42,125 nucleotides of DNA from Macrostomum lignano (taxonomy: Eukaryota). The stretch covers positions 184,015-226,139 of the forward strand of contig NIVC01001879.1 in the NCBI GenBank assembly GCA_002269645.1. Reading direction: 5' to 3'. Positions 3,933 to 38,386 of the stretch are shown piece by piece (position 1 is the first letter of the stretch; every line of letters starts with the position of its first letter). The position numbers were made by a program, and so were the translations under genes. Under the pieces are notes generated by a model. The model saw only the letters and a list, made by a program, of their open reading frames with translations. It made no database searches and was not told the origin of the DNA.

Positions 3933-4196
3933 TGTGATGACGTACAGTGTAGTGTGTTGTTGTGTGAGAGGGGGTTGGGGGAAGTGGGGTAGGAGTGTTC
4001 ATTATCGCGATGCGTCACCCATTGCTTGCTTGCTGTTCCTTCCTTCCTTTCCTTTCCCCCTTTGATTTGCGTACATGTATGAGAGACCCTCGAGGGTCTT
4101 TGTTGCTTGCGTACGGTGCTCGCTAAATATATAGAAGCGACTGGCTCTTTCGGAGCCTCAATCTTACTCGTACTTCTGCAGTAGACACGGTCTACA
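3933..4196 (+). repeat. 5-prime LTR (264 bp, TG...CA; shared homology continues 3 nt to 4199)
   Basis: Matches 8198-8455 except 4 transitions and one 6-bp indel; contains TATA-like TAAATATATAG. Confidence 0.95.
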
Positions 4197-4200
4197 AAAG

Positions 4201-4211
4201 TGGCGACGAGG
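4201..4211 (+). other. Primer binding site TGGCGACGAGG, complementary to the 3-prime end of tRNA-Ser(GCU)
   Basis: Located 4 nt after the LTR CA; reverse complement is CCUCGUCGCCA, the end of eukaryotic tRNA-Ser(GCU) as recalled; tRNA identity not database-checked. Confidence 0.8.
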
Positions 4212-4212
4212 T

Positions 4213-4871
4213 ATGAACCAAATTGGCTCCGTCGGACCCTTCGAAGAAGGGACAGAAACTTGGGTGCAATATCAAGAGCGCATTGAGCAGTTTTTTGTTG
4301 CCAACGACATTGCAGATGAGAAAAAGAGAGCAGTGTTGCTCAGCACGTGTGGCAAGCAAACGTATCAGTTGCTCTGCAGCCTTCTGTTGCCGAATAAGCC
4401 AGCTGGAACGTCTTATGCCGACATCTGCAAAGTACTAAAGGAGCACTTCGACCCAACGCCGCCAGAAATCGTTTTGCGCCATCGCTTTTATACTCGACAC
4501 CGTCAGCCTGGTGAATCCATTGCCGTCTTCTTGGCCGACCTCCGCAAGTTGGCAAACGGTTGCAATTTCACCAACCTGAACGAAATGCTGACGGACAGGC
4601 TCGTGCTGGGCATCAACGATGACGGAATCCAGCGGAAACTCCTTGCTGAGAAGGAACTGACGCTAGCAAAGGCACTATCAACCGCGCAGGCCCTCACTAC
4701 GGCCGCCGAGGGCACTCAGTTTGTGATGAAGGGCACCGAGCCAGAGTCTGTTCATGTCGTTCAGCAGTCGGCAACTGCCAGACGCTGTTTCCGATGTCTC
4801 TCACAGCGGCATCTGGCCGCCAAGTGTCCCTTCTTGAGCAAGAAATGCTTCAACTGCTCCAAGCTGGGGCA
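4213..4871 (+). pseudogene. gag: Retrotransposon gag (capsid-like region, one intact CCHC knuckle, second knuckle broken by frameshift)
   Basis: MNQIGSVGPFEEG...YQERIEQFF...DRLVLGI; CFRCLSQRHLAAKC; CFNCSKLG then frame switch to AACK. Confidence 0.92.
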
Positions 4872-5730
4872 GCTGCATGCAAGTCCCAGGCAGCCAGTGG
4901 TCGACGCGAGAGCCAGGCGGCGGTGCGCGAAGTCGGGTCGGAGATGGAAGAGACGCACTCCCTAGACGTGATGGCCGAGCGGAAGGGCAAGGTCCCTCCT
5001 ATTGAGACGACGGTTACAATTGACGATATACCCGTCCGTATGGAGATTGACACAGGTGCGTCAGTTTCGCTAATCTCTGCCAGGACCTATCGCTCACTGC
5101 TGCTGGAGCGGCCCAAGCTCGAGCCTGCTGGCACGATGCTACGAACGTACTCTGGCGAGCCGGTCCCCGTGCTGGGCAGGATCCGCGTTCGCGTGCGCGC
5201 CGAGGAGGCTGCCAAGGTCCTGCCACTGCTCGGGGTAGATGGCTCCGGTTCAGATCTAATTGGCCGAGACTGGCTGGCCGATCTGCCCCTGGACTGGCGC
5301 GAGATCAAGCAGATGCAGTTGCACCAGAGCGGTGAGCATCCTAAGATCCGCGACCTGCTGAAGCAGTATTCCGGTGTGTTCGAGTCCGGACTCGGCCAGT
5401 ATACAGGGCGGCCGGTGCAGTTGCGACTGAAGGACGGGGCCCGGCCTCGCTTTTTAAAGGCCCGCAACGTGCCTTACGCGCTGAAGGCCAAGGTTGAGGC
5501 ACACCTGGACAAGGAGATTGAGCAAGGTGTGCTCAAGCCCGTGAGTAGCTCTGACTATGCATCGCCTATTGTTCTGGTGCTGAAGGCCAATGGATCCGTT
5601 CGCATCTGTGCCGACTTCAAGCAGACGGTGAATCTCGACGTGGAACCGGAAAAGTATCCGCTGCCTCGGATTGACGAGCTATTCGCTAAGCTGGCCGGAG
5701 GGCAGAAGTTCACGAAGCTCGACCTCTCTC
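4872..5730 (+). pseudogene. pol: pol fragment 1: aspartic protease and N-terminal reverse transcriptase
   Basis: MEIDTGASVSLIS (DTG at 5049-5057); ASPIVLV..RICADFK..YPLPRIDELF..FTKLDLS. Confidence 0.93.
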
Positions 5731-7230
5731 TCACAGGCGTATTCGCGAATGCCCCTGGACGAGGCCTCTCAGCAGATCTGCACCATAAACACGTCCAAAG
5801 GGCAGCTGCGCTACACCCGGCTTCCGTTTGGCGTAGCGCCTGCAGCCGGAATTTTTCAGCGGCTCATGGATAGCCTGCTGCAGGCCATTCCGCATGTCGC
5901 CTGCTTCATTGATGACCTCATCATCACCGGGAGCGACGACGAGAGCCACCTGCGTTCACTAGAGCTGGTTCTACAGCGCCTGCAGCAGAGTGGCCTGAAG
6001 TGCGGACCGAACAAGTGCAGCTTTATGCAGGAGAGCGTGAGTTATCTGGGACACCGAATCGATGCCGCCGGCTTGCACCCGCTGCCAGAGAAGGTGCGGG
6101 CCATCGTGGATGCGCCAACGCCCAAGGACGAGACTCAGCTCCGCAGCTTCCTGGGGTTGGTCAACTACTACGGAAAATTCCTGCCGAACCTGGCCACCGA
6201 GCTGGCCCCACTGCATCGTCTACTGAACCGGGACGCTGGCTGGCGCTGGGGCACCGCACAGGATGCTGCCTTCCGTAAGAGCAAGGAGCTGCTCAGCAGG
6301 GCGCCAGTGCTCGCACATTTCGATGAGCGGCAGCCGCTAGTGCTGGAGTGCGACGCTTCTCCATACGGCTTAGGCGTGGTCATCAGTCATCGAATCGACG
6401 GTATCGACAGACCAATCGCCTTTGCCTCGCGCTCACTGCACGAAGCCGAGGCTAAGTACTCCCAGCTGGAAAAGGAGGCTTTGGCGGTGGTGTTCGGAGT
6501 GAAGAAGTTTCACACGTATCTATACGGCCGGCAGTTCACACTGATCAGCGATCACAAGCCGCTGTTGGGGCTGCTGCATGAGTCGAAGCCGATTCCCGCC
6601 ATGGCTTCCAGCAGAATCCAGCGGTGGGCGCTCACCCTGGCCGCCTACAGCTGCTCCATGGTGCACAGGGCGGGCAGGTCGCTGCTGCGTGCGGATGCTC
6701 TCAGCCGTCTTCCGCTGCCAGAGAGGCCGAAGGATTCGCTGGTGCCAGCGGATGTCGTGCTGATCATGGACATGCTGGACGAAGGCCCGGTGACAGCACG
6801 GCACATTCGAGCATGGACAAGGACGGACCCTGTGCTATCCAAGGTGCTGCGATCAGTCGAGTCCGGCCAGTGGCCGGCGAGACCGCCTCCGGAGCTGCAG
6901 CCGTACCGGTCGCGTGCGGAGCAGCTGGGCGTGGAAGACGGCTGCCTGATGTGGGGCAGTCGAATTGTGGTGCCATCGGCCGGTCGGGAGGCGCTGTTGC
7001 ACTGTCTGCATCAGGGACACCAGGGCGCCTCGAGGATGAAGGCGCTAGCCCGCAGTTTCTTCCGGTGGCCTGGGCTAGATGCCGAAATTGAGCAGCTCGT
7101 CAGCGCCTGCCCCGACTGCCAGGAGCTGCAGAAGACGCCTGCACCTGTACCGCTGCAGCCTTGGGCTTGGCCGGACCGGCCCTGGTCGCGCCTTCACATC
7201 GACTTCGCTGGTCCGGTGGAGGGCAAGATG
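5731..7230 (+). pseudogene. pol: pol fragment 2: RT core, RNase H, integrase HHCC zinc finger and first catalytic Asp
   Basis: RLPFGVAPAAGIFQR, FIDD (5905-5916), CDASPYGLG, YSQLEKEALAVVFG, SDHKPL, HQGH...CPDC, WSRLHIDFAGP. Confidence 0.94.
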
Positions 7231-7231
7231 C

Positions 7232-8122
7232 TTGCTAGTCATCGTTGACGCGCACTCCAAGTGGATGGATGTCCATGTGATGACGGCGACCTCCTCGGCC
7301 GCGACCATCCAGAGACTGCACCAAAGCTTCGCCACGCACGGGCTGCCGGACATCATCGTATCAGACAACGGACCGAACCTCGTGAGCGAGGAGATGGAGG
7401 CGTTCCTGGCGAAGAACGGCATCAGGGATGTGCGGACAGCGCCCTACCACCCGGCGTCCAATGGGCAAGCAGAGAGGACCGTCCATACGGTCAAGAGGTC
7501 ACTGGCAAAGCAGAAAAGCGGCTCCTTGGACGAGCGAGTGGCGCGGTTTCTGCTGACCTACCGTGTGACACCTCATGCAACGACGGGGACCCCTCCCTGT
7601 GAATTACTGATGGGTCGGAGGCTGCACTCGCTCCTGGATCGCGTTCGACCGGATCTGCCAGCACGAGTACAGCAGCAGCAAGCGCTGCAGAAACAGCAGT
7701 ACGACATCCATGCGCACGATCGTCGGGTCGAGGTCGGCGATGCCGTGCTGGCGAAGGACTTCGCCAATGGAGGCCGTTGGAAGCCGGCTACCGTAACGGT
7801 TAGTGCTGGCACGACGTCCCTTGAGTGCCGTTTTGACGACGGTCGCGGCGCCCACCGACACGTCGATCAGGTACGCAAGCCTGCGGCGCCCATTGTGCCG
7901 GCGGCCCCCTTTGATATCTCCGCAGCCTGCGAGTCTGCCGCCATCCTGCCGCTGCCCGGAGGAGGCAACCATCGACCTCTCGCAACCGCAGAGTTGCCTG
8001 AGACCCCGGCAGCAGAGACGGGCGTTGCTGATGCTGGTCCTGAAGCAGCTTCCGAGGAGTGGGCGGTGCCACGGAGATCGGCCAGGCTGCGATTCAAGCC
8101 GGAGAGGCTGACCTACAATTGA
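7232..8122 (+). pseudogene. pol: pol fragment 3: integrase catalytic core and C-terminus
   Basis: LLVIVDAHSKW, IVSDNGP, YHPASNGQAER, YRVTPHATTG; stop TGA ends at 8122. Confidence 0.94.
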
Positions 8123-8185
8123 CTGATTGCAACTGATGATCGCTTGTTTTGCTTTTTTGATGACACCTTCCGTGAACAAGATCTT

Positions 8186-8197
8186 AGTGGGAAAGGG
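8186..8197 (+). other. Polypurine tract AGTGGGAAAGGG
   Basis: Directly abuts the TG of the 3-prime LTR. Confidence 0.88.
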
Positions 8198-8455
8198 TGT
8201 GATGACGTACAGTGTAGTGTGTTGTTGTGTGAGAGGGGGTTGGGGGAAGTGGGGTAGGAATGTTCATTATCGCGATGCGTCACCCATTGCTTGCTTGCTG
8301 TTCCTTCCTTCCTTTCCTTTCCCCCTTTGATTTGCGTACATGTATGAGAGACCCTCGAGGGTCTTTGTTGCTTGCGTACGGCGCTCGTTAAATATATAGA
8401 AGCGACTGGCTCTTTCGGAGCCTCAATCTTACTTCTGCAGTAGACACGATCTACA
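8198..8455 (+). repeat. 3-prime LTR (258 bp, TG...CA), followed by AAA and then the ATTAC duplication
   Basis: Alignment by eye with 3933-4196. Confidence 0.95.
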
Positions 8456-9110
8456 AAAATTACCTTCTGCTAGCACTCAATGCAAAACAGGCTCTCAGAC
8501 CAACCTTGGGCTTTTAGGCACAAAATTCTGCATAGCTGCAATGGAGATGATGGAGAACAAGGGGGGCGAGAGGATACCGGGCTACCAGCCTCACCTCCCA
8601 TGCAGTTTTGCACCAGAACAAATATTGAATGAGCTGCTGGTTACCCCCGAATGACACAGGACTGTGGCTGCTGGCTGACTGCAATATCTGTACAGCAAGG
8701 TTGGCTGAGCAAGATCGATGCCCCGCCCGGGCCTGTCAGTGTTTAACCAGCCAGTCTGCCAGTCTGTTTCCATTTCTATATATTCTCTATTATTTCTAAA
8801 GCCTAATGGATCGGCTCAATGCGAGTTGGGGGGAGGACTGGGAAGTCTGACTCTGCCAAGAGTAATCAGTCAAATTTAATTCTAAGCGCGAGGCGCCAGT
8901 TCCGGCCTTTGATCTTGCTGAGTAAAGAAAACTTTTTAAGGAAAATTAGAGAAAAAAGAGAAATTTAAGGCGAAAAAAAATTGCAAGTGTGTTTCTGTCT
9001 TAATCAGATGGGCCAACTGCTTTGGTGATGAGGCGGGGAAAGGAGAAAAGAGCAAATGAGATCAGACGAGAGAAGTGACAAGGGACATGAAATGATAGCG
9101 GATGGTTGGT

Positions 9111-11188: not shown

Positions 11189-14010
11189 AAGTTTCGGACC
11201 ACTGAGGAGTCGCGAGAAGAGCTAGAAAGTTCTGCACTGTTGTAGGATCCCTAGAGTCGCAGAGTCCCAAGGAAGAGTCGCAGAGTCCTAAGGAAGAGTC
11301 GCAGAGTCCCAAGGAAGAGTCGCAGAGTCCCAAGGAAGAGTCGCAGAGTCCCAAGGAAGAGTCGCAGAGTCCTAAGGAAGAGTCGCAGAGTCCCAAGGAA
11401 GAGTCGCAGAGTCCCAAGGAAGAGTCGCAGAGTCCCAAGGAAGAGTCGCAGAGTCCCAAGGAAGAGTCGCAGAGTCGCAAGGAAGAGTCGCAGAGTCCTA
11501 AGGAAGAGTCGCAGAGTCGCAAGGAAGAGTCGCAGAGTCCCAAGGAAGAGTCGCAGAGTCCCAAGGATAAGTTTAGGACCACTGAGGAGTCGCGAGAAGA
11601 GCTAGAAAGTTCTGCACTGTTGTAGGATCCCTAGAGTCGCAGAGTCCTAAGGAAGAGTCGCAGAGTCCCAAGGAAGAGTCGCAGAGTCCTAAGGAAGAGT
11701 CGCAGAGTCCCAAGGAAGAGTCGCAGAGTCCTAAGGAAGAGTCGCAGAGTCCCAAGGAAGAGTCGCAGAGTCCTAAGGAAGAGTCGCAGAGTCCCAAGGA
11801 AGAGTCGCAGAGTCCTAAGGAAGAGTCGCAGAGTCCCAAGGAAGAGTCGCAGAGTCCCAAGGAAGAGTCGCAGAGTCGCAAGGAAGAGTCGCAGAGTCCT
11901 AAGGAAGAGTCGCAGAGTCCTAAGGAAGAGTCGCAGAGTCCCAAGGAAGAGTCGCAGAGTCCCAAGGAAGAGTCGCAGAGTCCCAAGGAAGAGTCGCAGA
12001 GTCGCAAGGAAGAGTCGCAGAGTCCTAAGGAAGAGTCGCAGAGTCGCAAGGAAGAGTCGCAGAGTCCCAAGGAAGAGTCGCAGAGTCGCAAGGAAGAGTC
12101 GCAGAGTCCCAAGGATAAGTTTAGGACCACTGAGGAGTCGCGAGAAGAGCTAGAAAGTTCTGCACTGTTGTAGGATCCCTAGAGTCGCAGAGTCCTAAGG
12201 AAGAGTCGCAGAGTCCCAAGGAAGAGTCGCAGAGTCCTAAGGAAGAGTCGCAGAGTCCCAAGGAAGAGTCGCAGAGTCCCAAGGAAGAGTCGCAGAGTCC
12301 TAAGGAAGAGTCGCAGAGTCCCAAGGAAGAGTCGCAGAGTCCTAAGGAAGAGTCGCAGAGTCCCAAGGAAGAGTCGCAGAGTCCCAAGGAAGAGTCGCAG
12401 AGTCCTAAGGAAGAGTCGCAGAGTCCCAAGGAAGAGTCGCAGAGTCCTAAGGAAGAGTCGCAGAGTCCCAAGGAAGAGTCGCAGAGTCCCAAGGAAGAGT
12501 CGCAGAGTCGCAAGGAAGAGTCGCAGAGTCCCAAGGAAGAGTCGCAGAGTCCCAAGGAAGAGTCGCAGAGTCCCAAGGATAAGTTTAGGACCACTGAGGA
12601 GTCGCGAGAAGAGCTAGAAAGTTCTGCACTGTTGTAGGATCCCTAGAGTCGCAGAGTCCTAAGGAAGAGTCGCAGAGTCCCAAGGAAGAGTCGCAGAGTC
12701 CTAAGGAAGAGTCGCAGAGTCCCAAGGAAGAGTCGCAGAGTCCCAAGGAAGAGTCGCAGAGTCCCAAGGAAGAGTCGCAGAGTCCTAAGGAAGAGTCGCA
12801 GAGTCCCAAGGAAGAGTCGCAGAGTCCCAAGGAAGAGTCGCAGAGTCCCAAGGAAGAGTCGCAGAGTCCCAAGGAAGAGTCGCAGAGTCCTAAGGAAGAG
12901 TCGCAGAGTCGCAAGGAAGAGTCGCAGAGTCCCAAGGAAGAGTCGCAGAGTCCCAAGGAAGAGTCGCAGAGTCCCAAGGATAAGTTTAGGACCACTGAGG
13001 AGTCGCGAGAAGAGCTAGAAAGTTCTGCACTGTTGTAGGATCCCTAGAGTCGCAGAGTCCCAAGGAAGATTCGCAGAGTCCCAAGGAAGAGTCGCAGAGT
13101 CCCAAGGAAGAGTCGCAGAGTCCCAAGGAAGAGTCGCAGAGTCCCAAGGAAGAGTCGCAGAGTCCTAAGGAAGATTCGCAGAGTCCCAAGGAAGAGTCGC
13201 AGAGTCCCAAGGAAGATTCGCAGAGTCCCAAGGAAGAGTCGCAGAGTCCCAAGGAAGAGTCGCAGAGTCCCAAGGAAGAGTCGCAGAGTCCCAAGGAAGA
13301 GTCGCAGAGTCGCAAGGAAGAGTCGCAGAGTCCTAAGGAAGAGTCGCAGAGTCCTAAGGAAGAGTCGCAGAGTCCCAAGGAAGAGTCGCAGAGTCCCAAG
13401 GAAGAGTCGCAGAGTCCCAAGGAAGAGTCGCAGAGTCGCAAGGAAGAGTCGCAGAGTCCTAAGGAAGAGTCGCAGAGTCGCAAGGAAGAGTCGCAGAGTC
13501 CCAAGGAAGAGTCGCAGAGTCGCAAGGAAGAGTCGCAGAGTCCCAATGAAGAGTCGCAGAGTCCTAAGGAAGAGTCGCAGAGTCCCAAGGAAGAGTCGCA
13601 GAGTCCCAAGGAAGAGTCGCAGAGTCGCAAGGAAGAGTCGCAGAGTCCCAAGGAAGAGTCGCAGAGTCCCAAGGAAGAGTCGCAGAGTCCCAAGGATAAG
13701 TTTAGGACCACTGAGGAGTCGCGAGAAGAGCTAGAAAGTTCTGCACTGTTGTAGGATCCCTAGAGTCGCAGAGTCCTAAGGAAGAGTCGCAGAGTCCCAA
13801 GGAAGAGTCGCAGAGTCCTAAGGAAGAGTCGCAGAGTCCTAAGGAAGAGTCGCAGAGTCCTAAGGAAGAGTCGCAGAGTCCCAAGGAAGAGTCGCAGAGT
13901 CCTAAGGAAGAGTCGCAGAGTCCCAAGGAAGAGTCGCAGAGTCCTAAGGAAGAGTCGCAGAGTCCCAAGGAAGAGTCGCAGAGTCCCAAGGAAGAGTCAC
14001 AGAGTCGCAG
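11189..14010. repeat. Higher-order VNTR: six 65-bp spacers, each followed by 15, 23, 19, 16, 31 and 11+ copies of the 21-mer GAGTCGCAGAGTC[C/G][C/T]AAGGAA
   Basis: Spacers start at 11189, 11569, 12117, 12581, 12982, 13698; all periods equal 65 + 21n. Confidence 0.96.
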
Positions 14011-14038
14011 TGCTCAGCCTCACTCTCGAATCCCACAG

Positions 14039-14819
14039 GACGAACCAGTCGCTGATGAGACGCAAGCGCACGGTAACAAAAACAATCTTCACCCTTCTCG
14101 GCGCCTTCCTCATCTTCGAGATCCCATTCTTCACCATGACCAGCATCACCAACCTGGCCATGTGCCACGACGGCGTGTTCGACTTCGCCGAGCACCGCGC
14201 CCTGATCCTCCAGCTCATGTTCCTGAGTTACCTGCCCGCCAACCTGGACTCTCTCTGCAACTTCTTCATCTACTTCGCCTGCTACACGCCGTTCCGCCGC
14301 AAGGCCAGGCAGTTTTTCCGACTTCGAGTGCGCGCCGCCCCTGCGCTGTCCTGCAGCCGCGGAGGCGGGGGCCGTGGCGGCGGCGGCGGCGGTGGTGGCA
14401 ACGGCGACGGCGGCCGCGGCGGCGTGGGCGGCGGCGGCGGTGGCGGCGGAGGCGAACTCAGCGGTGGTGGAGGCGACGGCACCCGCCTGGTCAGAGTTGG
14501 GGAGGGTAGCGCTCCCGCTGCTGTCGCTGCCGCGGCTGCCTCCACCTCGGCCGCTGTCTCTGGCGACGCCGCCGCGGCTATTCGGCACCAGCGATGTCTC
14601 GTCGTTGCCGACTGTTGCGACGAGAATTTCGACGACAATGACGACGAAATCGATGTCGAAGACGACATGGCAAGCGGCGTGGCCGCCTGCGGACAGCAGG
14701 AGCTGTGCAGAATCCTGGAGAGCGAAGCTTCATCAATGGACTGCTCGCCAGTGCACCGGTTCTACTGCCGAAGGCAGATCTCTAATCAGGACTCGGCCAC
14801 CGAGCTCACCATCACGTGA
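14039..14819 (+). CDS. Orphan GPCR exon 3 (TM6, TM7, long Gly-rich/acidic C-tail)
   Basis: Acceptor tcccacag| at 14038 (phase 2); KTIFTLLGAFLIFEIPFF; ANLDSLCNFFIYFACYTPFRR; joined CDS is 1608 nt, 535 aa, no internal stop. Confidence 0.9.
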
Positions 14820-14929: not shown

Positions 14930-15656
14930 ACTCAGCTGTGACTCATCGGACATGTGACTCATCGGACATGGGACTCATCAGACATGTCACTCATCAAACA
15001 TGTGACACATCGGACATGTCACTCATCGGACATGTCACTTATCAAACATGTGACTCATCGGACATGTGACTCATCGGACATGTCACTCATCAAACATGTG
15101 ACTCATCGGACATGTGACTCATCGGACATGTCACTCATCAAACATGTGACTCATCGGACATGTCACTCATCAAACATGTGACTCATCGGACATGTCACTC
15201 ATCAAACATGTGACTCATCGGACATGTGACTCATCGGACATGTCACTCATCAAACATGTGACTCATCAAACATGTGACTCATCGGACATGTGACTCATCG
15301 GACATGTCACTCATCAAACATGTGACTCATCAAACATGTGACTCATCGGACATGTGACTCATCGGACATGTCACTCATCAAACATGTCACTCATCAAACA
15401 TGTGACTCATCGGACATGTCACTCATCAAGCATGTGACTCATCGGACATGTCACTCATCGGACATGTGACTCATCGGACATGTCACTCATCAAACATGTC
15501 ACTCATCAAACATGTGACTCATCGGACATGTGACTCATCGGACATGTGACTCATCGGACATGTCACTCATCAAACATGTGACTCATCGGACATGTCACTC
15601 ATCAAACATGTGACTCATCGGACATGTCACTCATCAAACATGTGACTCATCGGACA
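14930..15656. repeat. 16-bp minisatellite ([G/C]ACTCATC[GG/AA]ACATGT)n, about 45 copies
   Basis: Direct reading. Confidence 0.96.
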
Positions 15657-18208: not shown

Positions 18209-18559
18209 TGCCAGGGCTCCCAAATCACTCCTGCCTGCTCTCTGCCGCATCAATCTTTCTCAGTTTCACTGCCGCTATCCTCTCCCACCTGTCGCCGCTC
18301 CCCCATGTGCACTCTCCTATTTGCCCAATCGTATCGGTTTACGAATGGTAAAAAACTCTACATTTCGGTTATGTGACACCGAAATAGGGATAACTGTCCC
18401 TTCTAGCCATTGTCCTTCTATCTGAACCTTCAAACCCGCCACAGTTTCCTCCCAGATCCCCTTCGGCTGGAAACAGCTGACGCAGATTCCCACGAAACGC
18501 CTCATCCAGCCGGCTCAAACACTGCTTTGTTCGTGCGGGACCTCCAGAGCTCCGTTCCG

Positions 18560-18579
18560 ATTGGCCAGCGGCCCATTGG
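18560..18579 (+). promoter_or_regulatory. Two inverted CCAAT boxes (ATTGG at 18560 and 18575) in a CpG-rich candidate promoter of the glycosyltransferase
   Basis: Motif spacing and CpG-island-like context; no transcript evidence. Confidence 0.4.
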
Positions 18580-19051
18580 CCCGCCAGTCCGACCTCTACA
18601 AAGCACAGCGCGGCGGTGAAAAGAGCCTCGCTTGGGCACTGAGGAGCTGCTGTGAGGCCCGGCCACGGACACCAGCTGAGAGCATCTTCTGCGGAGCATC
18701 CGAGGCAGCGGCATTTGCGACTCTCGAGACGCAGCCTCGAGGCAAGGCGGCAGCGGCTGCGGCGGCTGTCAGAGGAGGCGCCATTTTTCCTCCGCGAGCG
18801 GCTCCCCTGGCGCCGCGATTTCTGCCGCTCTGGCGCCAACAACAACAGTGCGCCAGGCAGGCGGCAGCGGCGGCGAGGTGACGCTCCGACTGTCGCCAGC
18901 CGGATCCTGCGGCGACGACGCTGGCAAGGGGAGCAGGAAGCTGCTGCGGCTGCAGCCTCACCTGCATCAGCACGGCCAGCCCGCTGCTGCCGCGACTCAA
19001 CTGGCGGCGCTGCGCTGGCCGTCCGGCGGAGCGGCGCCGGCCCTTGTGGCG

Positions 19052-19556
19052 ATGCTGCTGCTGTGCTCCGCGACCTTCATCCTGTTCCAGCTGCTGGTTG
19101 CCAGGGCGACTCTCAGCCGGCGGAACTCCCTGCTGCTGACCGACTCCCGGTCTCTGGAGGCCGGCGCCGACGGCGGCGGTAGCGTCGGCGGCGGCGTGGC
19201 TCGTCAGCTTCTCGGCGAGGCGCCCAGAGGTGCCGAAGTCGGCTTTGGCAGCGGTGAGGAGCAGCGGCCTGAGCGGGTGCTGCAGTGCCTGCGCGCCCTG
19301 GACGAGGAGCTGCGAGCGCTGGTGTACCAGCCGGTGCCCTCCGTCGAGAGGTTCACCGCCCAGCTGGCCGACGAGCTGGCGCGAATCCACGGCGCCGACG
19401 TCAGCCGCGGCGGCTGCAGCCGAATGCCCGGTCAGCACCGAGTGGCCAGGGAGATTCGCCAGCTGGGCGGCCCTGCGGCTGCTTCGACTCCGCCTGACCT
19501 GCCCGCCTGCCTGCCGCCTGCCGCCCCCAGCGCCCGGCTGCTGCGCTGGTTTTACC
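19052..19556 (+). CDS. GT7 beta-1,4-Gal/GalNAc-transferase exon 1 (membrane anchor and stem); start codon uncertain
   Basis: First ATG after 18371; hydrophobic [17 protein letters not shown]; donor C|GTGAGT at 19557, phase 1, matches acceptor at 33187; the link across the 13.6-kb intron is inferred. Confidence 0.65.
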
Positions 19557-22085: not shown

Positions 22086-22373
22086 TCTCCCAGCCTCTCC
22101 CAGACTCTCCCAGACTCTCCCAGATTCTCCAAGACTTTCCCAGACTCTTCCAGACTCTCCCAGACTCTCCCAGACTCTCCCAGCCTCTCCCAGCCTCTCC
22201 CAGACTCTCCCAGACTCTCCCAGCCTCTCCCAGACTCTCCCAGACTCTCCCAGACTCTCCCAGCCTCTCCCAGACTCTCCCAGACTCTCCCAGACTCTCC
22301 CAGACTCTCCCAGACTCTCCCAGACTCTCCCAGACTCTCCCAGACTCTCCCAGACTCTCCCAGACTCTCCCAG
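22086..22373. repeat. 10-bp minisatellite (CCAGACTCTC)n, array A
   Basis: Direct reading. Confidence 0.96.
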
Positions 22374-23027
22374 AAATCTCTGTGTCTTCCCGTTGCTAAA
22401 AATTGCTCTTTTTCTTGCTTATTAAACTGCAAAGCCAGCCCACCTGTATTCCTGCCCTATCCAGAAACATTACAGAAGAAAGCCATCCCAACGCTCCCCA
22501 TTTTGTTTACCCAATCCCCCCCCCGATGCTTGGGCGAAAAATTTGTGAAAACGAAGAATTCCCGGACCAACATGCGCAATGCAGTGCAGTTGACGCCTCT
22601 CACCTGCTGAAGAGGAGGCAAATCTAACCTCTCTTCCTCTTCCTCTCGTCTCCTGGCCCACAGGACTCTTCTCCCTCCACTCGCCCAGCCCTTGTGTCGA
22701 GCCTGATTGCATCCGAGAGTGCACCGTCCCTGCCTGCTCTGCCTTTCTCTCACTCTCTCTCTCTCTCTCTCTCTCTCGTTATTTTGCAAGTGAGAGAGTT
22801 GCCCGACGCTTACCTACAGAAAGTGCCAAATTAATCACTAAGGTTGAGCATGATGAGTACAATGTTTAGGCGCAGTGCTGTTTACCTGGATACGGGGAAG
22901 GAGAGTCTTTGAGCATGAAAATTTCTCCAAATCGCACTAGAAATTATAAATGCTGTCCGGGAAAAGTCACTAGTCATTGTCGGCTCGCGGTTGAACTGCT
23001 GCTTTGTTGAAGAAGAACCAAGGCATC

Positions 23028-27524: not shown

Positions 27525-27928
27525 GCTACAAGCAGATGGCTGTGTAAAGTTCCGTCTTAGCCAGCCGAAGATGTAGCCAAAATTATAATTCTAGCCAACA
27601 TTTGTATCGAACAGCCAGTCGGGTTGGAAATTCGAATCCAATCCTGTCTCGCCGGGTCAGAAATCAATCGATTGCATCGCTTGCAGCGCTCGGACTGACG
27701 CTGTTAATCCACCCTGGCTTTGGCCGATCCAAAATTGAGCAAAAAAGTTCAAATAGAAGCTCGGCAGCCTTTTTAACTTAAAATTGGGAAAGCAGAATGG
27801 CCAAGCCAATAGACTGGGGATCTCACAAGAGTTTGATAATCCCCATGGCTAAAAATCTCCCACATCCCGATCGAGTAGAGGCCGACAAACTGTACTTTTG
27901 TGAGCTCAGGGGTTTTTTCTACAGGTCA

Positions 27929-28210
27929 TTCTCCCTGATTCTCCCAGACTCCCAGCTCCCAGATTATCCCTGATTCTCCCAGATTCTCCCAGATTCTCCC
28001 AGATTCTCCCTGATTCTCCCTGATTCTCCCAGATTCTCCCAGATTCTCCCAGATTCTCCCTGATTCTCCCAGACTCTCCCAGATTCTCCCAGACTCTCCC
28101 AGACTCTCTCAGAGTCTCCCAGACTCTCCCAGACTCTCCCAGACTCTCCCAGACTCTCCCAGACTCTCCCAGACTCTCCCAGACTCTCCCAGACTCTCCA
28201 GATTCCCCAG
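27929..28210. repeat. 10-bp minisatellite (CCAGA[T/C]TCTC)n, array B
   Basis: Direct reading; same unit as 22086-22373. Confidence 0.95.
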
Positions 28211-28816
28211 AGTCTTCCAGCTTCTTATATTTATTCTAAACTTTAAGTGAGAACGGAAAGGCTGTCATATCTGCTGCTGGCCTCTCAGTCAGCATCTCAA
28301 TAGTCAATAACCAGTGGGATTCCGTACTAGAAGGTTTGAAACCTGAATCCCACCTTCAGTTTTTGATTGTCAATCTCAGATAAATTAGTGACCTTATTGA
28401 AGTTCAACGAAGGAGGCACGAGTTACCCAAGCCCAGATTGCTAGGGTCACCAGTGGTTCTGAGAGCAACTTCGATTAATAGCGCCCCATCTAGCCGGGTG
28501 CAGAAAGTGGAAATCTGTGTCTTGAAGGGTCGCGTTCTGCCGGGCACTCGAGGGAGAGAGGAGAAAACTTATTTTTGCCCCAGATTGATGAAGCCATTCT
28601 CACACGCACAGCCTCCGCGGCCTGCCGAAAATCCCAGTTAGCTCGGCGGCTCAGCAGCTGCAGCAACCCCCCCTTTCCCCAGCAGCTCAGCCCTGCTCTC
28701 AGGGGGGGGGGCAGAATTTCTGCAAATAATCATTTCATTAATTGGTGCACTTCTGCTTCCGCGGCAGGAGCACTCCCTCAGCCAGTTAATGGTCGGTGCT
28801 GATCAGCGCATGCTGC

Positions 28817-30288
28817 CTCTGTGTCCCTATCCCTGTCTCTGTTGTGTCCCTATCCCTGTCTCTGTTGTGTCCCTATCCCTGTCTCTGCTGTGTCCCTATC
28901 CCTGTCTCTGTTGTGTCCCAATCCCTGTCTCTGTTGTGTCCCTATCCATGTCTCTGTTGTGTCCCTATCCCTGTCTCTGTTGTGTCCCTACCCCTGTCTC
29001 TGTTGTGTCCCTATCCCTGTCTCTGTTGTGTCCCTATCCATGTCTCTGTTGTGTCCCTATCCATGTCTCTGTTGTGTCCCTATCCCTGTCTCTGTTGTGT
29101 CCCTATCCCTGTCTCTGTTGTGTCCCTATCCCTGTCTCTGTTGTGTCCCTATCCATGTCTCTGTTGTGTCCCTATCCATGTCTCTGTTGTGTCCCTATCC
29201 CTGTCTCTGTTGTGTCCCTATCCATGTCTCTGTTGTGTCCCTATCCCTGTCTCTGTTGTGTCCCTATCCCTGTCTCTGCTGTGTCCCTATCCCTGTCTCT
29301 GTTGTGTCCCTATCCCTGTCTCTGTTGTGTCCCTATCCCTGTCTCTGTTGTGTCCCTATCCCTGTCTCTGCTGTGTCCCTATCCCTTTCTCTGTTGTGTC
29401 CCTATCCATGTCTCTGTTGTGTCTCTATCCATGTCTCTGTTGTGTCCCTATCCCTGTCTCTGTTGTGTCCCTATCCATGTCTCTGTTGTGTCTCTATCCC
29501 TGTCTCTGTTGTGTCCCTATCCCTGTCTCTGTTGTGTCCCTATCCCTGTCTCTGTTGTGTCTCTATCCCTGTCTCTGTTGTGTCCCTATCCCTGTCTCTG
29601 CTGTGTCCCTATCCCTGTCTCTGTTGTGTCCCTATCCATGTCTCTGTTGTGTCTCTATCCCTGTCTCTGTTGTGTCCCTATCCCTGTCTCTGCTATGTCC
29701 CTATCCCTGTCTCTGTTGTGTCCCTATCCATGTCTCTGTTGTGTCTCTATCCCTGTCTCTGTTGTGTCTCTATCCTGTCTCTGTTGTGTCCCTATCCCTG
29801 TCTCTGTTGTGTCCCTATCCCTGTCTCTGTTGTGTCCCTATCCCTGTCTATGTTGTGTCCCTATCCCTGTCTCTGTTGTGTCCCTATCCCTGTCTCTGTT
29901 GTGTCCCTATCCCTGTCTCTGTTGTGTCCCTATCCCTGTCTCTGCTGTGTCCCTATCCCTGTCTCTGTTGTGTTCCTATCCATGTCTCTGTTGTGTCCCT
30001 ATCCCTGTCTCTGTTGTGTCCCTATCCCTGTCTCTGTTGTGTCCCTATCCCTGTCTCTGTTGTGTCCCTATCCCTTTCTCTGTTGTGTCCCTATCCCTGT
30101 CTCTGTTGTGTCCCTATCCCTGTCTCTGTTGTGTCCCTATCCCTGTCTCTGCTGTGTCCCTATCCCTGTCTCTGTTGTGTTCCTATCCATGTCTCTGTTG
30201 TGTCCCTATCCCTGTCTCTGTTGTGTCCCTATCCCTGTCTCTGTTGTGTCCCTATCCCTGTTCTCTGTTGTGTCCCTATCCATGTCTC
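28817..30288. repeat. 23-bp minisatellite (GTCCCTATCCCTGTCTCTGTTGT)n, array 1
   Basis: Direct reading; decays gradually into unique sequence on the right. Confidence 0.97.
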
Positions 30289-34700: not shown

Positions 34701-35408
34701 TCACTCGTCCATCAGAAGTTTTTCTCTACCAGTCCGCCAGTCACTCTGCTCGCGGCACTCCTAGCACAAGTTAACCACTTGTCTCAAGTTTACCATCATA
34801 AAGTTGGGCTCCTCAAAAAGTGCTGAATCATTGGCAGCATGGCGCACAGCCTCCGCTCCTCTCTCACTCTCCCCTTCATCAGCGCTTACTCCGCCCCGAA
34901 ATTTCTTATTTTTTCTCAACCCCGAGCCAGCAGCCCTTCCAATTTTTTACTGGAGTGAAATTCCTCATGTCCCACCACGCGGTGCAGCGGGACCGCATAG
35001 CATTAATCATTTACTAAACATTTTTCTCAGACTTCATCGTCTCTCCTTAGTCCCTTGCCGCCCTCTGCGCTTGGCTCGCCTGACCGAAATTTTATCATAT
35101 ATTAATGAAGATCCCCCGGCTACTGCGGGTGAAGCATGCTTAAGATAAAATAATAAATTATTCAAGGCAAAATGCTCTTCGCATAGTGGAAGGCGTTGCT
35201 CTTTGGCCCATTTAACTCTGTATATGTTCAGACACATTGTTATGAAGTTAATTAAAAAGAGTCAAAATTTAGTATTGAGCGCATTGTCCCTTAGAAAAAT
35301 CAATTAGGCTTAAATTGAAATACAGAGCTACGGCCCACAAATACTAGAATATCTAGATAGTTACGAGTGCCACTCGCAACAAACACCTCATCTACTACTC
35401 ATATTTTG

Positions 35409-37165
35409 TCTCTGTTGTGTCTCTATCCCTGTCTCTGTTGTGTCTCTATCCCTGTCTCTGTTGTGTCTCTATCCCTGTCTCTGTTGTGTCTCTATCCCTG
35501 TCTCTGTTGTGTCTCTATCCCTGTCTCTGTTGTGTCCCTATCCGTGTCTCTGTTGTGTCCCTATCCCTGTCTCTGTTGTGTCCCTATCCGTGTCTCTGTT
35601 GTGTCCCTATCCCTGTCTCTGTTGTGTCTCTATCCCTGTCTCTGTTGTGTCTCTATCCCTGTCTCTGTTGTGTCCCTATCCGTGTCTCTGTTGTGTCCCT
35701 ATCCCTGTCTCTGTTGTGTCTCTATCCCTGTCTCTGTTGTGTCCCTATCCGTGTCTCTGTTGTGTCCCTATCCGTGTCTCTGTTGTGTCCCTATCCCTGT
35801 CTCTGTTGTGTCTCTATCCCTGTCTCTGTTGTGTCCCTATCCGTGTCTCTGTTGTGTCCCTATCGGTGTCTCTGTTGTGTCTCTATCCCTGTCTCTGTTG
35901 TGTCCCTATCGGTGTCTCTGTTGTGTCTCTATCCCTGTCTCTGTTGTGTCTCTATCCCTGTCTCTGTTGTGTCCCTATCCGTGTCTCTGTTGTGTCCCTA
36001 TCCGTGTCTCTGTTGTGTCCCTATCCGTGTCTCTGTTGTGTCCCTATCCGTGTCTGTTGTGTCCCTATCCGTGTCTCTGTTGTGTCCCTATCCGTGTCTC
36101 TGTTGTGTCCCTATCCGTGTCTCTGTTGTGTCCCTATCGGTGTCTCTGTTGTGTCCCTATCCGTGTCTCTGTTGTGTCCCTATCCGTGTCTCTGTTGTGT
36201 CCCTATCCGTGTCTCTGTTGTGTCCCTATCCATGTCTCTGTTGTGTCCCTATCCGTGTCTCTGTTGTGTCCCTATCCGTGTCTCTGTTGTGTCCCTATCC
36301 GTGTCTCTGTTGTGTCCCTATCGGTGTCTCTGTTGTGTCCCTATCCGTGTCTCTGTTGTGTCCCTATCGGTGTCTCTGTTGTGTCCCTATCGGTGTCTCT
36401 GTTGTGTCCCTATCCCTGTCTCTGTTGTGTCCCTATCCATGTCTCTGTTGTGTCCCTATCCGTGTCTCTGTTGTGTCCCTATCCGTGTCTCTGTTGTGTC
36501 CCTATCCGTGTCTCTGTTGTGTCCCTATCCCTGTCTCTGTTGTGTCCCTATCCGTGTCTCTGTTGTGTCCCTATCCGTGTCTGTTGTGTCCCTATCCCTG
36601 TCTCTGTTGTGTCCCTATCCGTGTCTCTGTTGTGTCCCTATCCGTGTCTCTGTTGTGTCCCTATCCGTGTCTCTGTTGTGTCTCTATCCGTGTCTCTGTT
36701 GTGTCCCTATCCGTGTCTCTGTTGTGTCTCTATCCCTGTCTCTGTTGTGTCTCTATCCGTGTGTCTGTTGTGTCCCTATCCCTGTCTCTGTTGTGTCCCT
36801 ATCCCTGTCTCTGTTGTGTCTCTATCCCTGTCTCTGTTGTGTCCCTATCCGTGTCTCTGTTGTGTCCCTATCCGTGTCTCTGTTGTGTCTCTATCCCTGT
36901 CTCTGTTGTGTCCCTATCCGTGTCTCTGTTGTGTCCCTATCCGTGTCTCTGTTGTGTCCCTATCCGTGTCTCTGTTGTGTCCCTATCCGTGTCTCTGTTG
37001 TGTCTCTATCCCTGTCTCTGTTGTGTCCCTATCCGTGTCTCTGTTGTGTCCCTATCGGTGTCTCTGTTGTGTCCCTATCCCTGTCTCTGTTGTGTCCCTA
37101 TCCATGTCTCTGTTGTGTCCCAATCCGTGTCTCTGTTGTGTCTCTATCCCTTTCTCTGTTGTGTC
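35409..37165. repeat. 23-bp minisatellite array 2 (same family as 28817-30288), flanked by a 22-bp direct repeat
   Basis: CTCATCTACTACTCATATTTTG at 35387-35408 and 37181-37202. Confidence 0.97.
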
Positions 37166-37805
37166 TTGTAGTAGATGTGACTCATCTACTACTCATATTT
37201 TGAGTAGTTGTCAATAAAATAAACAAGACTAACTAATCTAAATTGAGCTTCCTAAACCTAAAATATTAAGACAGAAGGGGTCAGTGTAGAGTCAGTGAGC
37301 GAAGCCCACAACAGTATCATGGGTCACTCACAGAAACTGAGCTGAGCTGAGCTGAGCTGATTCTGATTCTGATTAGAATCATGGGGGCGCAGGGGGGGGG
37401 GGGTAAAGGCACGCAGAAAGGGGGGTTGGTTAGCTACGCAAAAGAATGGAGGGTGAAGTGAGAACGAGAGGCTAAAGAGGGACGAAGTGAGGACCAATCA
37501 GAGTGAAGAGAGGGTGAGAGAGAGAAAGGCTTAATTGCACGAGAGAGAGAGAGAGAGAGTAAACAACAAAGAGTGCAAGGTGAACTAAAGGAGAACAGAA
37601 GTCGCTACAGTAGTAAAATTTGCGTTTTTTTCCTTGCATATTAGTAAAATACAATTGTAATAACATTTTACTTCTAAAGTAGCTCGTGCAAGCTGTTTAG
37701 CTAAAAACCCATCAAATTGGCATCCTCATCCTGTTCTACCGACTTCAAAGTTATTTGAAAATAAAAACGTTAGGCTTGTTCAAAGACCTCTGTTAAGTTA
37801 AAACC

Positions 37806-38386
37806 CCAACCCTAACCCTAACCCTAACCATAACCCTAACCCTAACCCTAACCATAACCATAACCCAAACCATAACCATAACCATAACCCTAACCATAAC
37901 CATAACCCTAACCATAACCATAACCCTAACCATAACCATAACCCTAACCATAACCATAACCCAAACCATAACCATAACCATAACCCAAACCATAACACTA
38001 ACCATAACCCTAACCATAACCCTAACCATAACCCTAACCATAACCCAAACCATAACCCAAACCATAACCCAAACCATAACCCTAACCATAACCCTAACCA
38101 TAACCCAAACCATAACCATAACCCTAACCATAACCCAAACCATAACCCAAACCATAACCCAAACCATAACCCTAACCATAACCCTAACCATAACCCAAAC
38201 CATAACCATAACCCTAACCATAACCCTAAACATAACCCTAACCATAACCCAAACCATAACCATAACCCTAACCATAACCATAACCCTAGTCATACCCTAA
38301 CTATAACCATAACCCTAGTCATAACCCTAACCCTAACCATAACCCTACACCAACCCATAACCCAAAAGACTAACCGTGACCCTAAC
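37806..38386. repeat. Telomere-like hexamer array mixing CCCTAA, CCATAA and CCCAAA
   Basis: Direct reading; reverse complement TTAGGG/TTATGG/TTTGGG. Confidence 0.92.

What the first reader, a model, noticed from the sequence alone, without database searches (positions are those of the whole stretch)
35387..37202. A 1.76-kb minisatellite that looks inserted: 22-bp flanking duplication plus inverted templated filler
Seen: the 23-bp array (35409-37165) is bracketed by an exact 22-bp direct repeat, CTCATCTACTACTCATATTTTG (35387-35408 and 37181-37202). The 15-nt filler TTGTAGTAGATGTGA between the array end and the right copy contains GTAGTAGATG, the reverse complement of CATCTACTAC inside the duplicated segment. 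The right flank also folds as ACTACTCA-tattt-TGAGTAGT. Both array edges are sharp. Known: long target duplications occur with target-primed retrotransposition, and inverted fillers copied from flanking DNA are typical of polymerase theta end joining or template switching. Inference: a pre-formed minisatellite was captured at a hairpin-prone break. That would be a route for minisatellites to move between introns without a transposon body; no poly(A) tail or element termini are visible.
Basis: partly seen in the sequence, partly recalled or inferred. Interest (0 to 1): 0.72.

Follow-up and report, generated by a model that had tools for sequence, protein, structure and literature searches.

The report
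Minisatellite copy inserted with repair scars
A 1.76-kb block of a 23-bp repeat sits in unique AT-rich DNA between two exact copies of a 22-bp host segment plus a short back-copied filler, which looks like the scar of one DNA-repair or template-switching accident that planted a second copy of a repeat already present 5 kb upstream; it is a clean example of a process already proposed for satellite DNA.

Summary
An exact 22-mer (35387-35408 and 37181-37202) brackets a 76.4-unit array of a 23-bp repeat. A 15-nt filler contains a perfect 10-nt inverted copy of part of the 22-mer (P about 7e-4). Of 23 arrays tested in this minisatellite-saturated window (51% tandem repeat), only this one has similar flanks (z = 11.9).

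The two arrays share 4 of 7 substitution types (P = 0.007). However, 58% of the units in the flanked array (44 of 76) carry a private variant.

I found no terminal inverted repeats, Helitron ends, poly(A) tail or other copies of the flanks.

My best reading is a transposon-independent insertion during break repair or replication. In this reading the repeat was copied in by template switching from an existing array, with a snap-back filler and a return 22 nt behind the departure point. The array then turned over in place.

- Sharp edges are the rule for arrays in this window, so they are not distinctive.
- The hairpin is modest and off-centre from the breakpoints.
- Nothing places the array in an intron.

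No empty site, other genomic copies or reads could be obtained, so the mechanism is inferred from a single locus. Similar satellite dispersal with flank duplication is already published.

The parts
35387..35408 (+). Left copy of the duplicated 22-bp host segment, CTCATCTACTACTCATATTTTG. Its last TG is also in phase with the repeat unit.
35409..37165 (+). Array of the 23-bp unit GTTGTGTC[C/T]CTATC[C/G][C/G/A]TGTCTCT. It has 76 units plus 13 nt, starts at unit position 19 and ends at position 8. The interior is dominated by the private CCGTG and CGGTG variants. The edge units carry variants shared with the upstream array.
37166..37180 (+). 15-nt filler TTGTAGTAGATGTGA. Bases 37168-37177 are an exact inverted copy of CATCTACTAC in the duplicated segment. 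Together with the adjacent 22-mer it forms a 10-bp stem with a 5-nt loop.
37181..37202 (+). Right copy of the duplicated 22-bp host segment.
37188..37208 (.). Native 8-bp stem with 5-nt loop, ACTACTCA-TATTT-TGAGTAGT, spanning the right end of the duplicated segment and the first 6 nt of the unduplicated flank.
   Evidence: (-6 kcal/mol, z = -2.9).
28820..30288 (+). Second array of the same 23-bp repeat, with 63 units, in the same orientation, 5.1 kb upstream. It is a candidate donor or sister copy. It lacks the 22-mer. By eye its right edge trails off into degenerate units up to about 30350.

Best explanation
This is the scar of one transposon-independent insertion event made during break repair or disturbed replication in a unique AT-rich spacer.

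Proposed path, read on the minus strand from right to left:
1. A growing 3' end reached the position that is now the left end of the 22-mer (...GTAGTAGATGAG-3').
2. It acquired about 3 untemplated bases (TCA).
3. It snapped back on itself, CA pairing with TG, and copied 8 bases (TCTACTAC).
4. It switched to an existing array of the 23-bp repeat and copied several units. The copy 5.1 kb upstream, in the same orientation, is the obvious candidate donor, but it is unproven.
5. It returned to the original template through a CA/TG dinucleotide, 22 nt behind its point of departure. That return duplicated the 22-mer.

The same product arises if the 22-mer came from filling in a 22-nt staggered break. 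After insertion the array expanded and homogenised in place, which spread the private CCGTG and CGGTG variants through its interior.

Shown: the duplication, the inverted templated filler, the absence of element ends, the second array, the shared variant types and the private interior variants.

Inferred: the order of the steps, the copy-in rather than ligation mode, the donor, the size of the seed and the enzymes involved.

The feature is a mutational footprint. No function is implied.
For: - The exact 22-nt flank repeat is unique in the window, with 0 expected by chance. It is the only significant flank similarity among 23 arrays (score 22 against a null of 7.1 +/- 1.3, z = 11.9, all others z < 2.5).
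- The filler holds an exact 10-nt inverted copy of the adjacent flank (P about 7e-4). With its template it forms a stem with a 5-nt loop. This is the geometry of snap-back synthesis described for Pol theta and SD-MMEJ. A TG/CA primer repeat is reported there too (PMC4912351 abstract; PMC5728401). Short foldback inverted insertions at yeast breaks are also documented (PMC11724301).
- Both flanks are AT-rich (GC 0.35 and 0.33) against 0.50 for the window, as expected for one interrupted spacer.
- An array of the same 23-mer lies 5.1 kb upstream in the same orientation. Four of the 7 substitution types in the flanked array are among the 10 types of the upstream array (hypergeometric P = 0.0067). 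The two rarest shared types sit in its last two full units.
- A second repeat family, the 10-mer arrays at 22086 and 27928, also occurs twice in the same orientation 5.8 kb apart. This hints at local copying in this region.
- The flanks carry no inverted repeats, direct repeats or repeated sequence beyond the 22-mer.
- There is published precedent. Drosophila Rsp-like satellite clusters inserted through microhomology-mediated repair, and four of those clusters carry a 32-bp duplication of the flank (PMC7403614).
Against: - Microhomology at the switches is minimal (2 nt, 0-1 nt and 0 nt). MMBIR and TMEJ junctions usually show more.
- TMEJ normally leaves deletions, not a 22-bp duplication, and its trans-templated tracts are short.
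- The order of unit variants in the two arrays shares nothing beyond chance (longest common run 3, equal to the null). Each array also has private variants. The upstream array is therefore not demonstrably the donor.
- No empty site, other genomic copies or reads were available. Polarity, timing and even the reality of the junctions in the organism are untested.
- An equally parsimonious variant cannot be excluded. In it the 15-nt 'filler' is native sequence and the left 22-mer is the templated piece.
Confidence: 0.45

Rival explanations
1. Physical capture of a pre-formed piece of the repeat. A free linear fragment or a linearised extrachromosomal circle of the 23-bp satellite was ligated into a break with 22-nt staggered ends. 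The ends were filled in, giving the duplication. One end was extended by snap-back synthesis before joining.
For: It rests on the same duplication and filler evidence. Tandem repeats readily form extrachromosomal circles, and reintegration of such circles has been proposed for satellite spread (PMC7403614; Tribolium preprint; PMC7719264). Junction microhomology of 0-2 nt suits end joining.
Against: The insert is not a whole number of units (76 units plus 13-16 nt), so a circle opened once without trimming is excluded. Natural breaks with 22-nt stagger are unusual. Having the only other copy 5 kb away in the same orientation fits local copying better than random reintegration. The private interior variants show that most of the array was not pre-formed.
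Confidence: 0.22
2. The array is old and arose at this site. The 22-mer and filler reflect a later small rearrangement at one boundary, such as a deletion junction repaired with a templated copy of sequence from the other side of a then shorter array.
For: Sharp array edges are the norm in this window and so do not in themselves indicate insertion. Templated patches copied from nearby sequence are typical of alternative end joining.
Against: It needs two separate events to explain two clean edges, a 22-nt direct copy and an adjacent inverted copy. Both flanks share the same AT-rich composition. The flanks show no unit-like decay (in-phase identity 0.26-0.39).
Confidence: 0.08
3. RNA-mediated insertion by a LINE machinery through target-primed reverse transcription. 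A transcript of the repeat was reverse transcribed from a nick after ...ATTTTG on the plus strand. A second nick 22 nt away produced the target-site duplication, and the filler arose at the 5' junction.
For: A 22-bp duplication is within the LINE range; a median near 15 bp is reported for somatic L1 insertions. The inferred first-nick site is T-rich followed by a purine. Extra or inverted bases at 5' junctions of L1 insertions are known (titles and abstracts).
Against: There is no poly(A) tail, no LINE or SINE 3' tail and no element body. The inverted filler copies the target, not the insert as twin priming would. The only retroelement found in the window is an LTR type, which does not use this mechanism.
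Confidence: 0.07
4. The array is the internal repeat of a non-autonomous transposon such as a MITE, Helitron or similar element. The 22-mer and filler are element ends or nested copies.
For: Satellite arrays carried inside non-autonomous elements are well documented (discussed in the paper read; review PMC9659126 listed). CATCTACTAC ... GTAGTAGATG could be read as 10-bp terminal inverted repeats.
Against: The sequences outside those putative inverted repeats (..AACACCT and TGACTCAT..) are not a target duplication. The right 22-mer repeats the left 'terminal repeat' plus 10 internal bases, which a single element does not explain. No 5'-TC...CTRR-3' ends or A|T insertion site are present. No further inverted or direct repeats occur within 600-750 nt of the flanks. 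The other array of the family has none of these ends.
Confidence: 0.04
5. Assembly artefact. A mis-join or a collapsed or expanded consensus inside a long tandem repeat created the junctions.
For: Tandem arrays are error-prone in assemblies, and no reads could be examined.
Against: An artefact would not be expected to produce an exact 22-nt duplication plus a 15-nt filler that is an inverted copy of the flank with a small loop. Both junctions are in unique sequence and the flanks are compositionally continuous.
Confidence: 0.05

Closest known systems
Templated insertions of polymerase theta-mediated end joining / synthesis-dependent MMEJ (snap-back synthesis)
   Same: A short inverted copy of break-proximal sequence lies next to its template, separated by a few bases. 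A few apparently untemplated bases are present. There is a CA/TG primer repeat and 0-2 nt of junction microhomology.
   Different: Here the insert also contains 1.76 kb of tandem repeat, and the break site is duplicated by 22 bp rather than deleted. Enzyme dependence is unknown.
Fork stalling and template switching / microhomology-mediated break-induced replication (established knowledge; discussed for satellites in PMC7403614)
   Same: One nascent strand appears to have used four templates in series: flank, its own strand inverted, a repeat array, and the flank again. It returned behind the departure point, and a possible donor lies a few kb away in cis.
   Different: Microhomology at the switches is at most 2 nt. 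The donor is not proven. This is a single locus with no parental or empty allele.
Transposon-independent dispersal of satellite DNA in Drosophila (Rsp-like into 1.688), Tribolium Cast satellites and human euchromatic alpha satellite
   Same: Tandem repeats appear at new euchromatic sites without element ends. Microhomology at junctions is reported there. Four Drosophila clusters carry a 32-bp duplication of the flank.
   Different: The target here is unique DNA rather than a pre-existing satellite. The unit is 23 bp, minisatellite scale. An inverted snap-back filler is present. There are no circular-DNA or comparative data.
LINE-mediated retro-insertion with target-site duplication
   Same: The duplication length is in range and the putative first-nick site is T-rich.
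   Different: There is no poly(A) or LINE tail, no element body, and the inverted filler derives from the target.
Minisatellite birth in place by slippage between short flanking direct repeats (Haber and Louis; Taylor and Breden, as summarised in PMC3389668)
   Same: A direct repeat flanks a tandem array.
   Different: In those models the 5-10-bp repeat is part of the unit. Here the 22-mer is unrelated to the 23-bp unit and absent from the array.

Membership tests
Pol theta / SD-MMEJ templated insertion | The filler is a direct or inverted copy of sequence within a few tens of nt of the junction. | tested here: met
   Exact 10-nt inverted copy lying 5 nt from its template; P about 7e-4.
Pol theta / SD-MMEJ templated insertion | Microhomology at the final junctions. 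| tested here: inconclusive
   2 nt (TG) at the left junction and 0-1 nt at the array/filler and filler/22-mer junctions. Matches this short are expected by chance.
Pol theta / SD-MMEJ templated insertion | Net loss or no gain of break-site sequence, and short inserts. | tested here: not met
   The site carries a 22-bp duplication and the insert is now 1.76 kb.
Pol theta / SD-MMEJ templated insertion | Genetic dependence on POLQ. | not testable with these tools
   The organism is unidentified and no genetics is available.
FoSTeS / MMBIR template switching | Segments from two or more separate templates are joined in one product, including inverted pieces. | tested here: met
   The order is flank, array, inverted flank piece, repeated flank.
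FoSTeS / MMBIR template switching | An identifiable donor template, usually nearby in cis, is retained after the event. | tested here: inconclusive
   An array of the same family lies 5.1 kb upstream in the same orientation and shares variant types (P = 0.0067). The order of variants is not shared.
FoSTeS / MMBIR template switching | Microhomology of 2-5 nt at each switch. | tested here: not met
   Only one junction has 2 nt; the others have 0-1 nt.
DNA transposon / MITE carrying an internal array | Terminal inverted repeats abutting a fixed short target-site duplication. | tested here: not met
   The only inverted pair is filler against the duplicated segment. The sequences outside it differ. 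There are no other inverted repeats in 600-750 nt of flank.
DNA transposon / MITE carrying an internal array | Several copies share the same termini. | tested here: not met
   Within the window the other array lacks the 22-mer and filler. Genome-wide copies could not be examined.
Helitron | 5'-TC ... CTRR-3' ends inserted between A and T, with a subterminal 3' hairpin. | tested here: not met
   Neither strand shows these ends at either junction (read).
LINE/SINE target-primed retro-insertion | Target-site duplication of roughly 7-20+ bp. | tested here: met
   22 bp, exact.
LINE/SINE target-primed retro-insertion | A poly(A) or family-specific 3' tail next to one copy of the duplication. | tested here: not met
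   The array abuts the left 22-mer directly. The right side has the inverted filler.
In situ minisatellite birth by slippage between flanking short direct repeats | The flanking repeat is part of, and in phase with, the repeat unit. | tested here: not met
   The 22-mer is absent from the array. In-phase flank identity is 0.26-0.39.
Reintegrated extrachromosomal circle of satellite DNA | The insert is a circular permutation with a whole number of units. | tested here: inconclusive
   The insert is 76 units plus 13-16 nt. This is not integral, but end trimming could account for it.
Reintegrated extrachromosomal circle of satellite DNA | The repeat is present in the circular DNA fraction. | not testable with these tools
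   No such data are available.

The most novel reading that the evidence does not exclude
The scarred array is the youngest visible product of a recurrent, element-free copy-in process. That process would have seeded most of the 20-odd sharp-edged, unrelated minisatellites that fill half of this region. In this genome, break repair by template switching onto neighbouring arrays would then be the main way new minisatellite loci are born. Older copies would have lost, or never had, the flank duplication.
Probability: 0.1. Interest if true: 0.7.

Novelty: new member of a known kind. Interest (0 to 1): 0.35.

Why it matters
How tandem repeats reach new loci without a transposon is still argued mostly from indirect evidence, such as extrachromosomal circles, microhomology and array phylogenies. 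Here both junctions are intact to the base: a 22-bp flank duplication, an inverted snap-back filler, a possible donor 5 kb away, and edge units that keep donor-type variants while the interior has been rebuilt. If an empty allele and other copies can be found in the source genome, the locus would give a base-resolution example of repair-mediated seeding followed by expansion in place. It would also offer a way to ask why this region is half minisatellite. On its own it is one locus, and its mechanism is inferred.

Tried and rejected
Searches for related loci all failed:
- An exact look-up of the open reading frame spanning the array found nothing.
- A protein search with that frame scored nothing.
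- A metagenome scan with 20 nt of the 22-mer gave three hits with unrelated flanks, which I take as chance.
- Scans of viral and prokaryote genome collections for the double unit gave 0 hits.
- A full-text search for the repeat units in papers gave 0 hits.

Attempts to identify the organism:
- The retroelement RT/RNase H piece has its best match at 73% identity on a Tara Oceans marine metagenome contig. Other matches are at 50-55% to fishes, lungfish, a sponge and a hemichordate.
- The GPCR-like fragment had no word-sharing relatives and one distant Srw-type relative.
- The source is an aquatic animal absent from the databases searched.
- Rfam and tRNA scans found nothing.

Ideas rejected:
- Terminal-inverted-repeat transposon and Helitron.
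- Segmental duplication of array plus flanks.
- Hairpin-capped end with palindromic P-nucleotide addition. The centre of the palindrome is asymmetric (TGA where AG is expected), so a looped snap-back fits better.
- A 12-mer at the filler/22-mer boundary matches the unit of the array at 14937-15656, but about 0.85 such matches are expected by chance.
- Conserved order of unit variants between the two arrays was not found.
- Flank duplications at the other 22 arrays were not found, even allowing mismatches.
Full report

Yes. The region reads ...CAACAAACAC | CTCATCTACTACTCATATTTTG | (TCTCT GTTGTGTC...)n | TTGTAGTAGATGTGA | CTCATCTACTACTCATATTTTG | AGTAGTTGTCAATAAA....

- The 22-mer occurs exactly twice in the 42-kb window even with 3 mismatches allowed, and never in shuffles.
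- TRF reports a 23-bp array at 35407-37165 with 76.7 copies and 95% matches. Cut by hand it is 76 units plus 13 nt, and two units are 21 nt long.
- The filler contains GTAGTAGATG, the exact complement of CATCTACTAC inside the 22-mer. Only 7e-4 of 200,000 random 15-mers do as well against the +/-50-nt flanks.
- The stem ACTACTCA/TGAGTAGT exists. In the joined empty site it folds at -6 kcal/mol (z = -2.9).
- Small corrections: the terminal TG of the left 22-mer is in phase with the unit, and the first filler T fits the T-variant unit. Allowing a 2-nt TG slip (or a 3-nt skip), 12-13 of the 15 filler bases are an inverted copy of the flank.

**2.

- The window is eukaryotic, with CpG observed/expected of 0.55. 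Tandem arrays from more than 20 unrelated families make up 51% of it.
- I tested every array for flank similarity. Exact matches longer than 10 nt occur only here. Local alignment of 100-nt flanks gives z = 11.9 here and z < 2.5 for the 22 others. The signature is real but singular.
- 'Sharp edges' is not evidence of insertion in this window. Nearly all arrays drop to random in-phase identity immediately outside the TRF boundaries.
- A second array of the same 23-mer lies at 28820-30288, in the same orientation, 5.1 kb upstream. It lacks the 22-mer. By eye its right edge decays into degenerate units.

**3. How the two arrays relate**

Relative to the common consensus GTTGTGTCCCTATCCCTGTCTCT:
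- The flanked array has 7 substitution types and the upstream array has 10. Four are shared (hypergeometric P = 0.0067).
- The two rarest shared types (11T>A, 18G>T) are in the last two full units of the flanked array. Its first five units are the shared 9C>T type.
- The interior is dominated by 16C>G (44 of the 76 units, 7 of them also carrying 15C>G), which is absent upstream. The upstream array has a private 2T>C type.
- The order of variants is not conserved (longest common run 3, equal to shuffles).

My reading is that the two arrays draw on one variant pool, the edge units keep older types, and most of the present 1.76 kb was generated in place after the locus was founded. This weakens 'a pre-formed minisatellite was captured'. 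The founding piece may have been only a handful of units.

**4. Transposon and retro-insertion models**

- The flanks are unique in the window.
- Beyond the 22-mer there is no direct or inverted similarity between 720 nt of left flank and 600 nt of right flank.
- If CATCTACTAC...GTAGTAGATG are read as terminal inverted repeats, the bases outside them are not duplicated. The right 22-mer would then repeat one terminus plus internal sequence. I reject this model.
- No Helitron ends or A|T insertion site are present, and there is no poly(A) or LINE-type tail.
- A LINE-type nick after ATTTTG and a 22-bp duplication are compatible with target-primed reverse transcription. Everything else that defines that route is missing.
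- The only retroelement in the window is a Ty3/gypsy-like LTR element.

**5. Most likely mechanism**

Read on the minus strand, the right junction is ...CAAAATATGAGTAGTAGATGAG | TCA | CATCTACTAC | A(A) | GACACAAC.... The steps I infer are:
1. A 3' end stops at GATGAG.
2. It gains about three untemplated bases.
3. Its CA pairs with the TG four bases back and copies TCTACTAC from its own strand.
4. It then continues on repeat sequence.
5. At the far end the repeat ...AGAGA(CA) rejoins the host at CAAAATATG, 22 nt behind the departure point. This is what duplicates the 22-mer.

The literature supports the individual steps:
- The alternation of untemplated addition, snap-back copying in cis and copying in trans is the behaviour described for polymerase theta (PMC4912351, abstract).
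- The SD-MMEJ model describes the same pattern, including TG/CA primer repeats (PMC5728401).
- Yeast shows analogous short foldback insertions made by Pol delta plus end joining (PMC11724301).
- A return behind the departure point, an inverted piece and a donor a few kb away in cis are the hallmarks of serial template switching (FoSTeS/MMBIR; established knowledge, invoked for satellites in PMC7403614).

I therefore favour copy-in by template switching (confidence 0.45) over ligation of a free fragment or opened circle into a 22-nt staggered break (0.22).

Points in favour of copy-in:
- The nearby co-oriented copy of the repeat.
- A second family that is also present twice locally (10-mer arrays at 22086 and 27928).
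- The non-integral unit count of the insert.

Points against copy-in:
- Microhomology is at most 2 nt.
- The donor is unproven.
- TMEJ usually deletes sequence rather than duplicating it.

An equally parsimonious sub-variant, in which the 15-nt 'filler' is native and the left 22-mer is the templated piece, can only be separated from this by an empty allele.

**6. The hairpin, the introns and the age**

- The duplication boundaries lie 7 nt left of the stem and 2 nt into its right arm. The hairpin is near the event but not positioned as a cleavage or stalling point. It may have mattered only as single-strand secondary structure during repair.
- Nothing shows that the array is intronic. The one gene-like feature is a GPCR-like TM6-TM7 open frame at 14010-14300 that stops at 14819. 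It has a single distant relative, E = 5e-4, which is an Srw-type 7TM protein.
- Zero differences in 22 bp only bound the divergence between the two copies below about 13% (95%). For comparison, the LTR pair in the window differs by 3.7%.

**7. Comparison with what is known, and novelty**

- Transposon-free spread of tandem repeats through microhomology-mediated repair, template switching or circles has been proposed for Drosophila Rsp-like and 1.688 satellites, Tribolium Cast satellites and human alpha satellite. Four of the Drosophila clusters carry a 32-bp flank duplication.
- The classical in situ birth models need a 5-10-bp repeat that is part of the unit (PMC3389668). That is not the case here.
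- This locus is a new, unusually well-preserved member of a known kind, at minisatellite scale and in unique DNA. It is not a new kind of system.

**8. Limits**

- No related sequence from the same or a close genome could be obtained.
I put that at about 5%.

Noticed in passing
window 1-42125: 51% of the window is tandem arrays from more than 20 unrelated families, with units of 4-59 bp and arrays of 0.15-2.8 kb. They are separated by short unique spacers, and almost all have abrupt edges. What generates such a minisatellite-saturated region is unexplained.
   Followed up: partly
window 22086-22374 and 27928-28225: Two arrays of the same 10-bp repeat (TCTCCCAGAC) are about 87% alike, in the same orientation and 5.8 kb apart. 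Unrelated arrays lie between them and there is no flank duplication. This is a second case of a repeat family present twice locally.
   Followed up: partly
window 3933-8458: A Ty3/gypsy-like LTR retrotransposon. The LTRs at 3933-4199 and 8198-8458 are 96.3% identical. The gag-like, protease, RT-RNase H and integrase regions lie in four overlapping open frames in different phases (4213-4965, 4794-5873, 5671-7248, 7079-8122), so the polyprotein frame is interrupted. The best database match to the RT piece is 73% identity on a Tara Oceans marine metagenome contig.
   Followed up: partly
window 14010-14819 (+): An open frame begins right after the 21-bp array and looks like TM6-TM7 and the tail of a rhodopsin-class GPCR (...NFFIYF...), followed by a Gly/Ala-rich tract from a GCG repeat. 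Pfam 7tm_1 gives E = 0.009. One distant relative, E = 5e-4, is an Srw-type 7TM protein. If this is a real exon, the 2.75-kb array at 11253-14006 would sit in the intron just upstream.
   Followed up: partly
window 37802-38386: A telomere-like array (AACCCTAACCAT)n of about 50 copies lies 600 nt downstream of the finding. It may indicate a subtelomeric or interstitial-telomeric setting.
   Followed up: no
window 37175-37186 versus 14937-15656: The 12-mer ATGTGACTCATC across the filler/22-mer boundary equals 12 of the 16 nt of the unit of the array at 14937-15656. About 0.85 such 12-mer matches are expected by chance for the scanned flanks, so I treated it as coincidence.
   Followed up: yes
window 28820-30288 versus 35409-37165 (minus strand): The upstream array has 67 overlapping long-loop (up to 15 nt) G-quadruplex-type motifs on the minus strand. 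The flanked array, dominated by CCGTG units, has 1. Neither has motifs with loops of 7 nt or less. CCATG units could be deamination products of CCGTG.
   Followed up: no
window 18300-19500: A GC-rich segment (GC 0.58-0.63) with long Ala/Arg/Pro-rich open frames on both strands lies between (AGAC)n and (CTGT)n arrays. It may be a CpG island or a first exon. It had no Pfam match.
   Followed up: no
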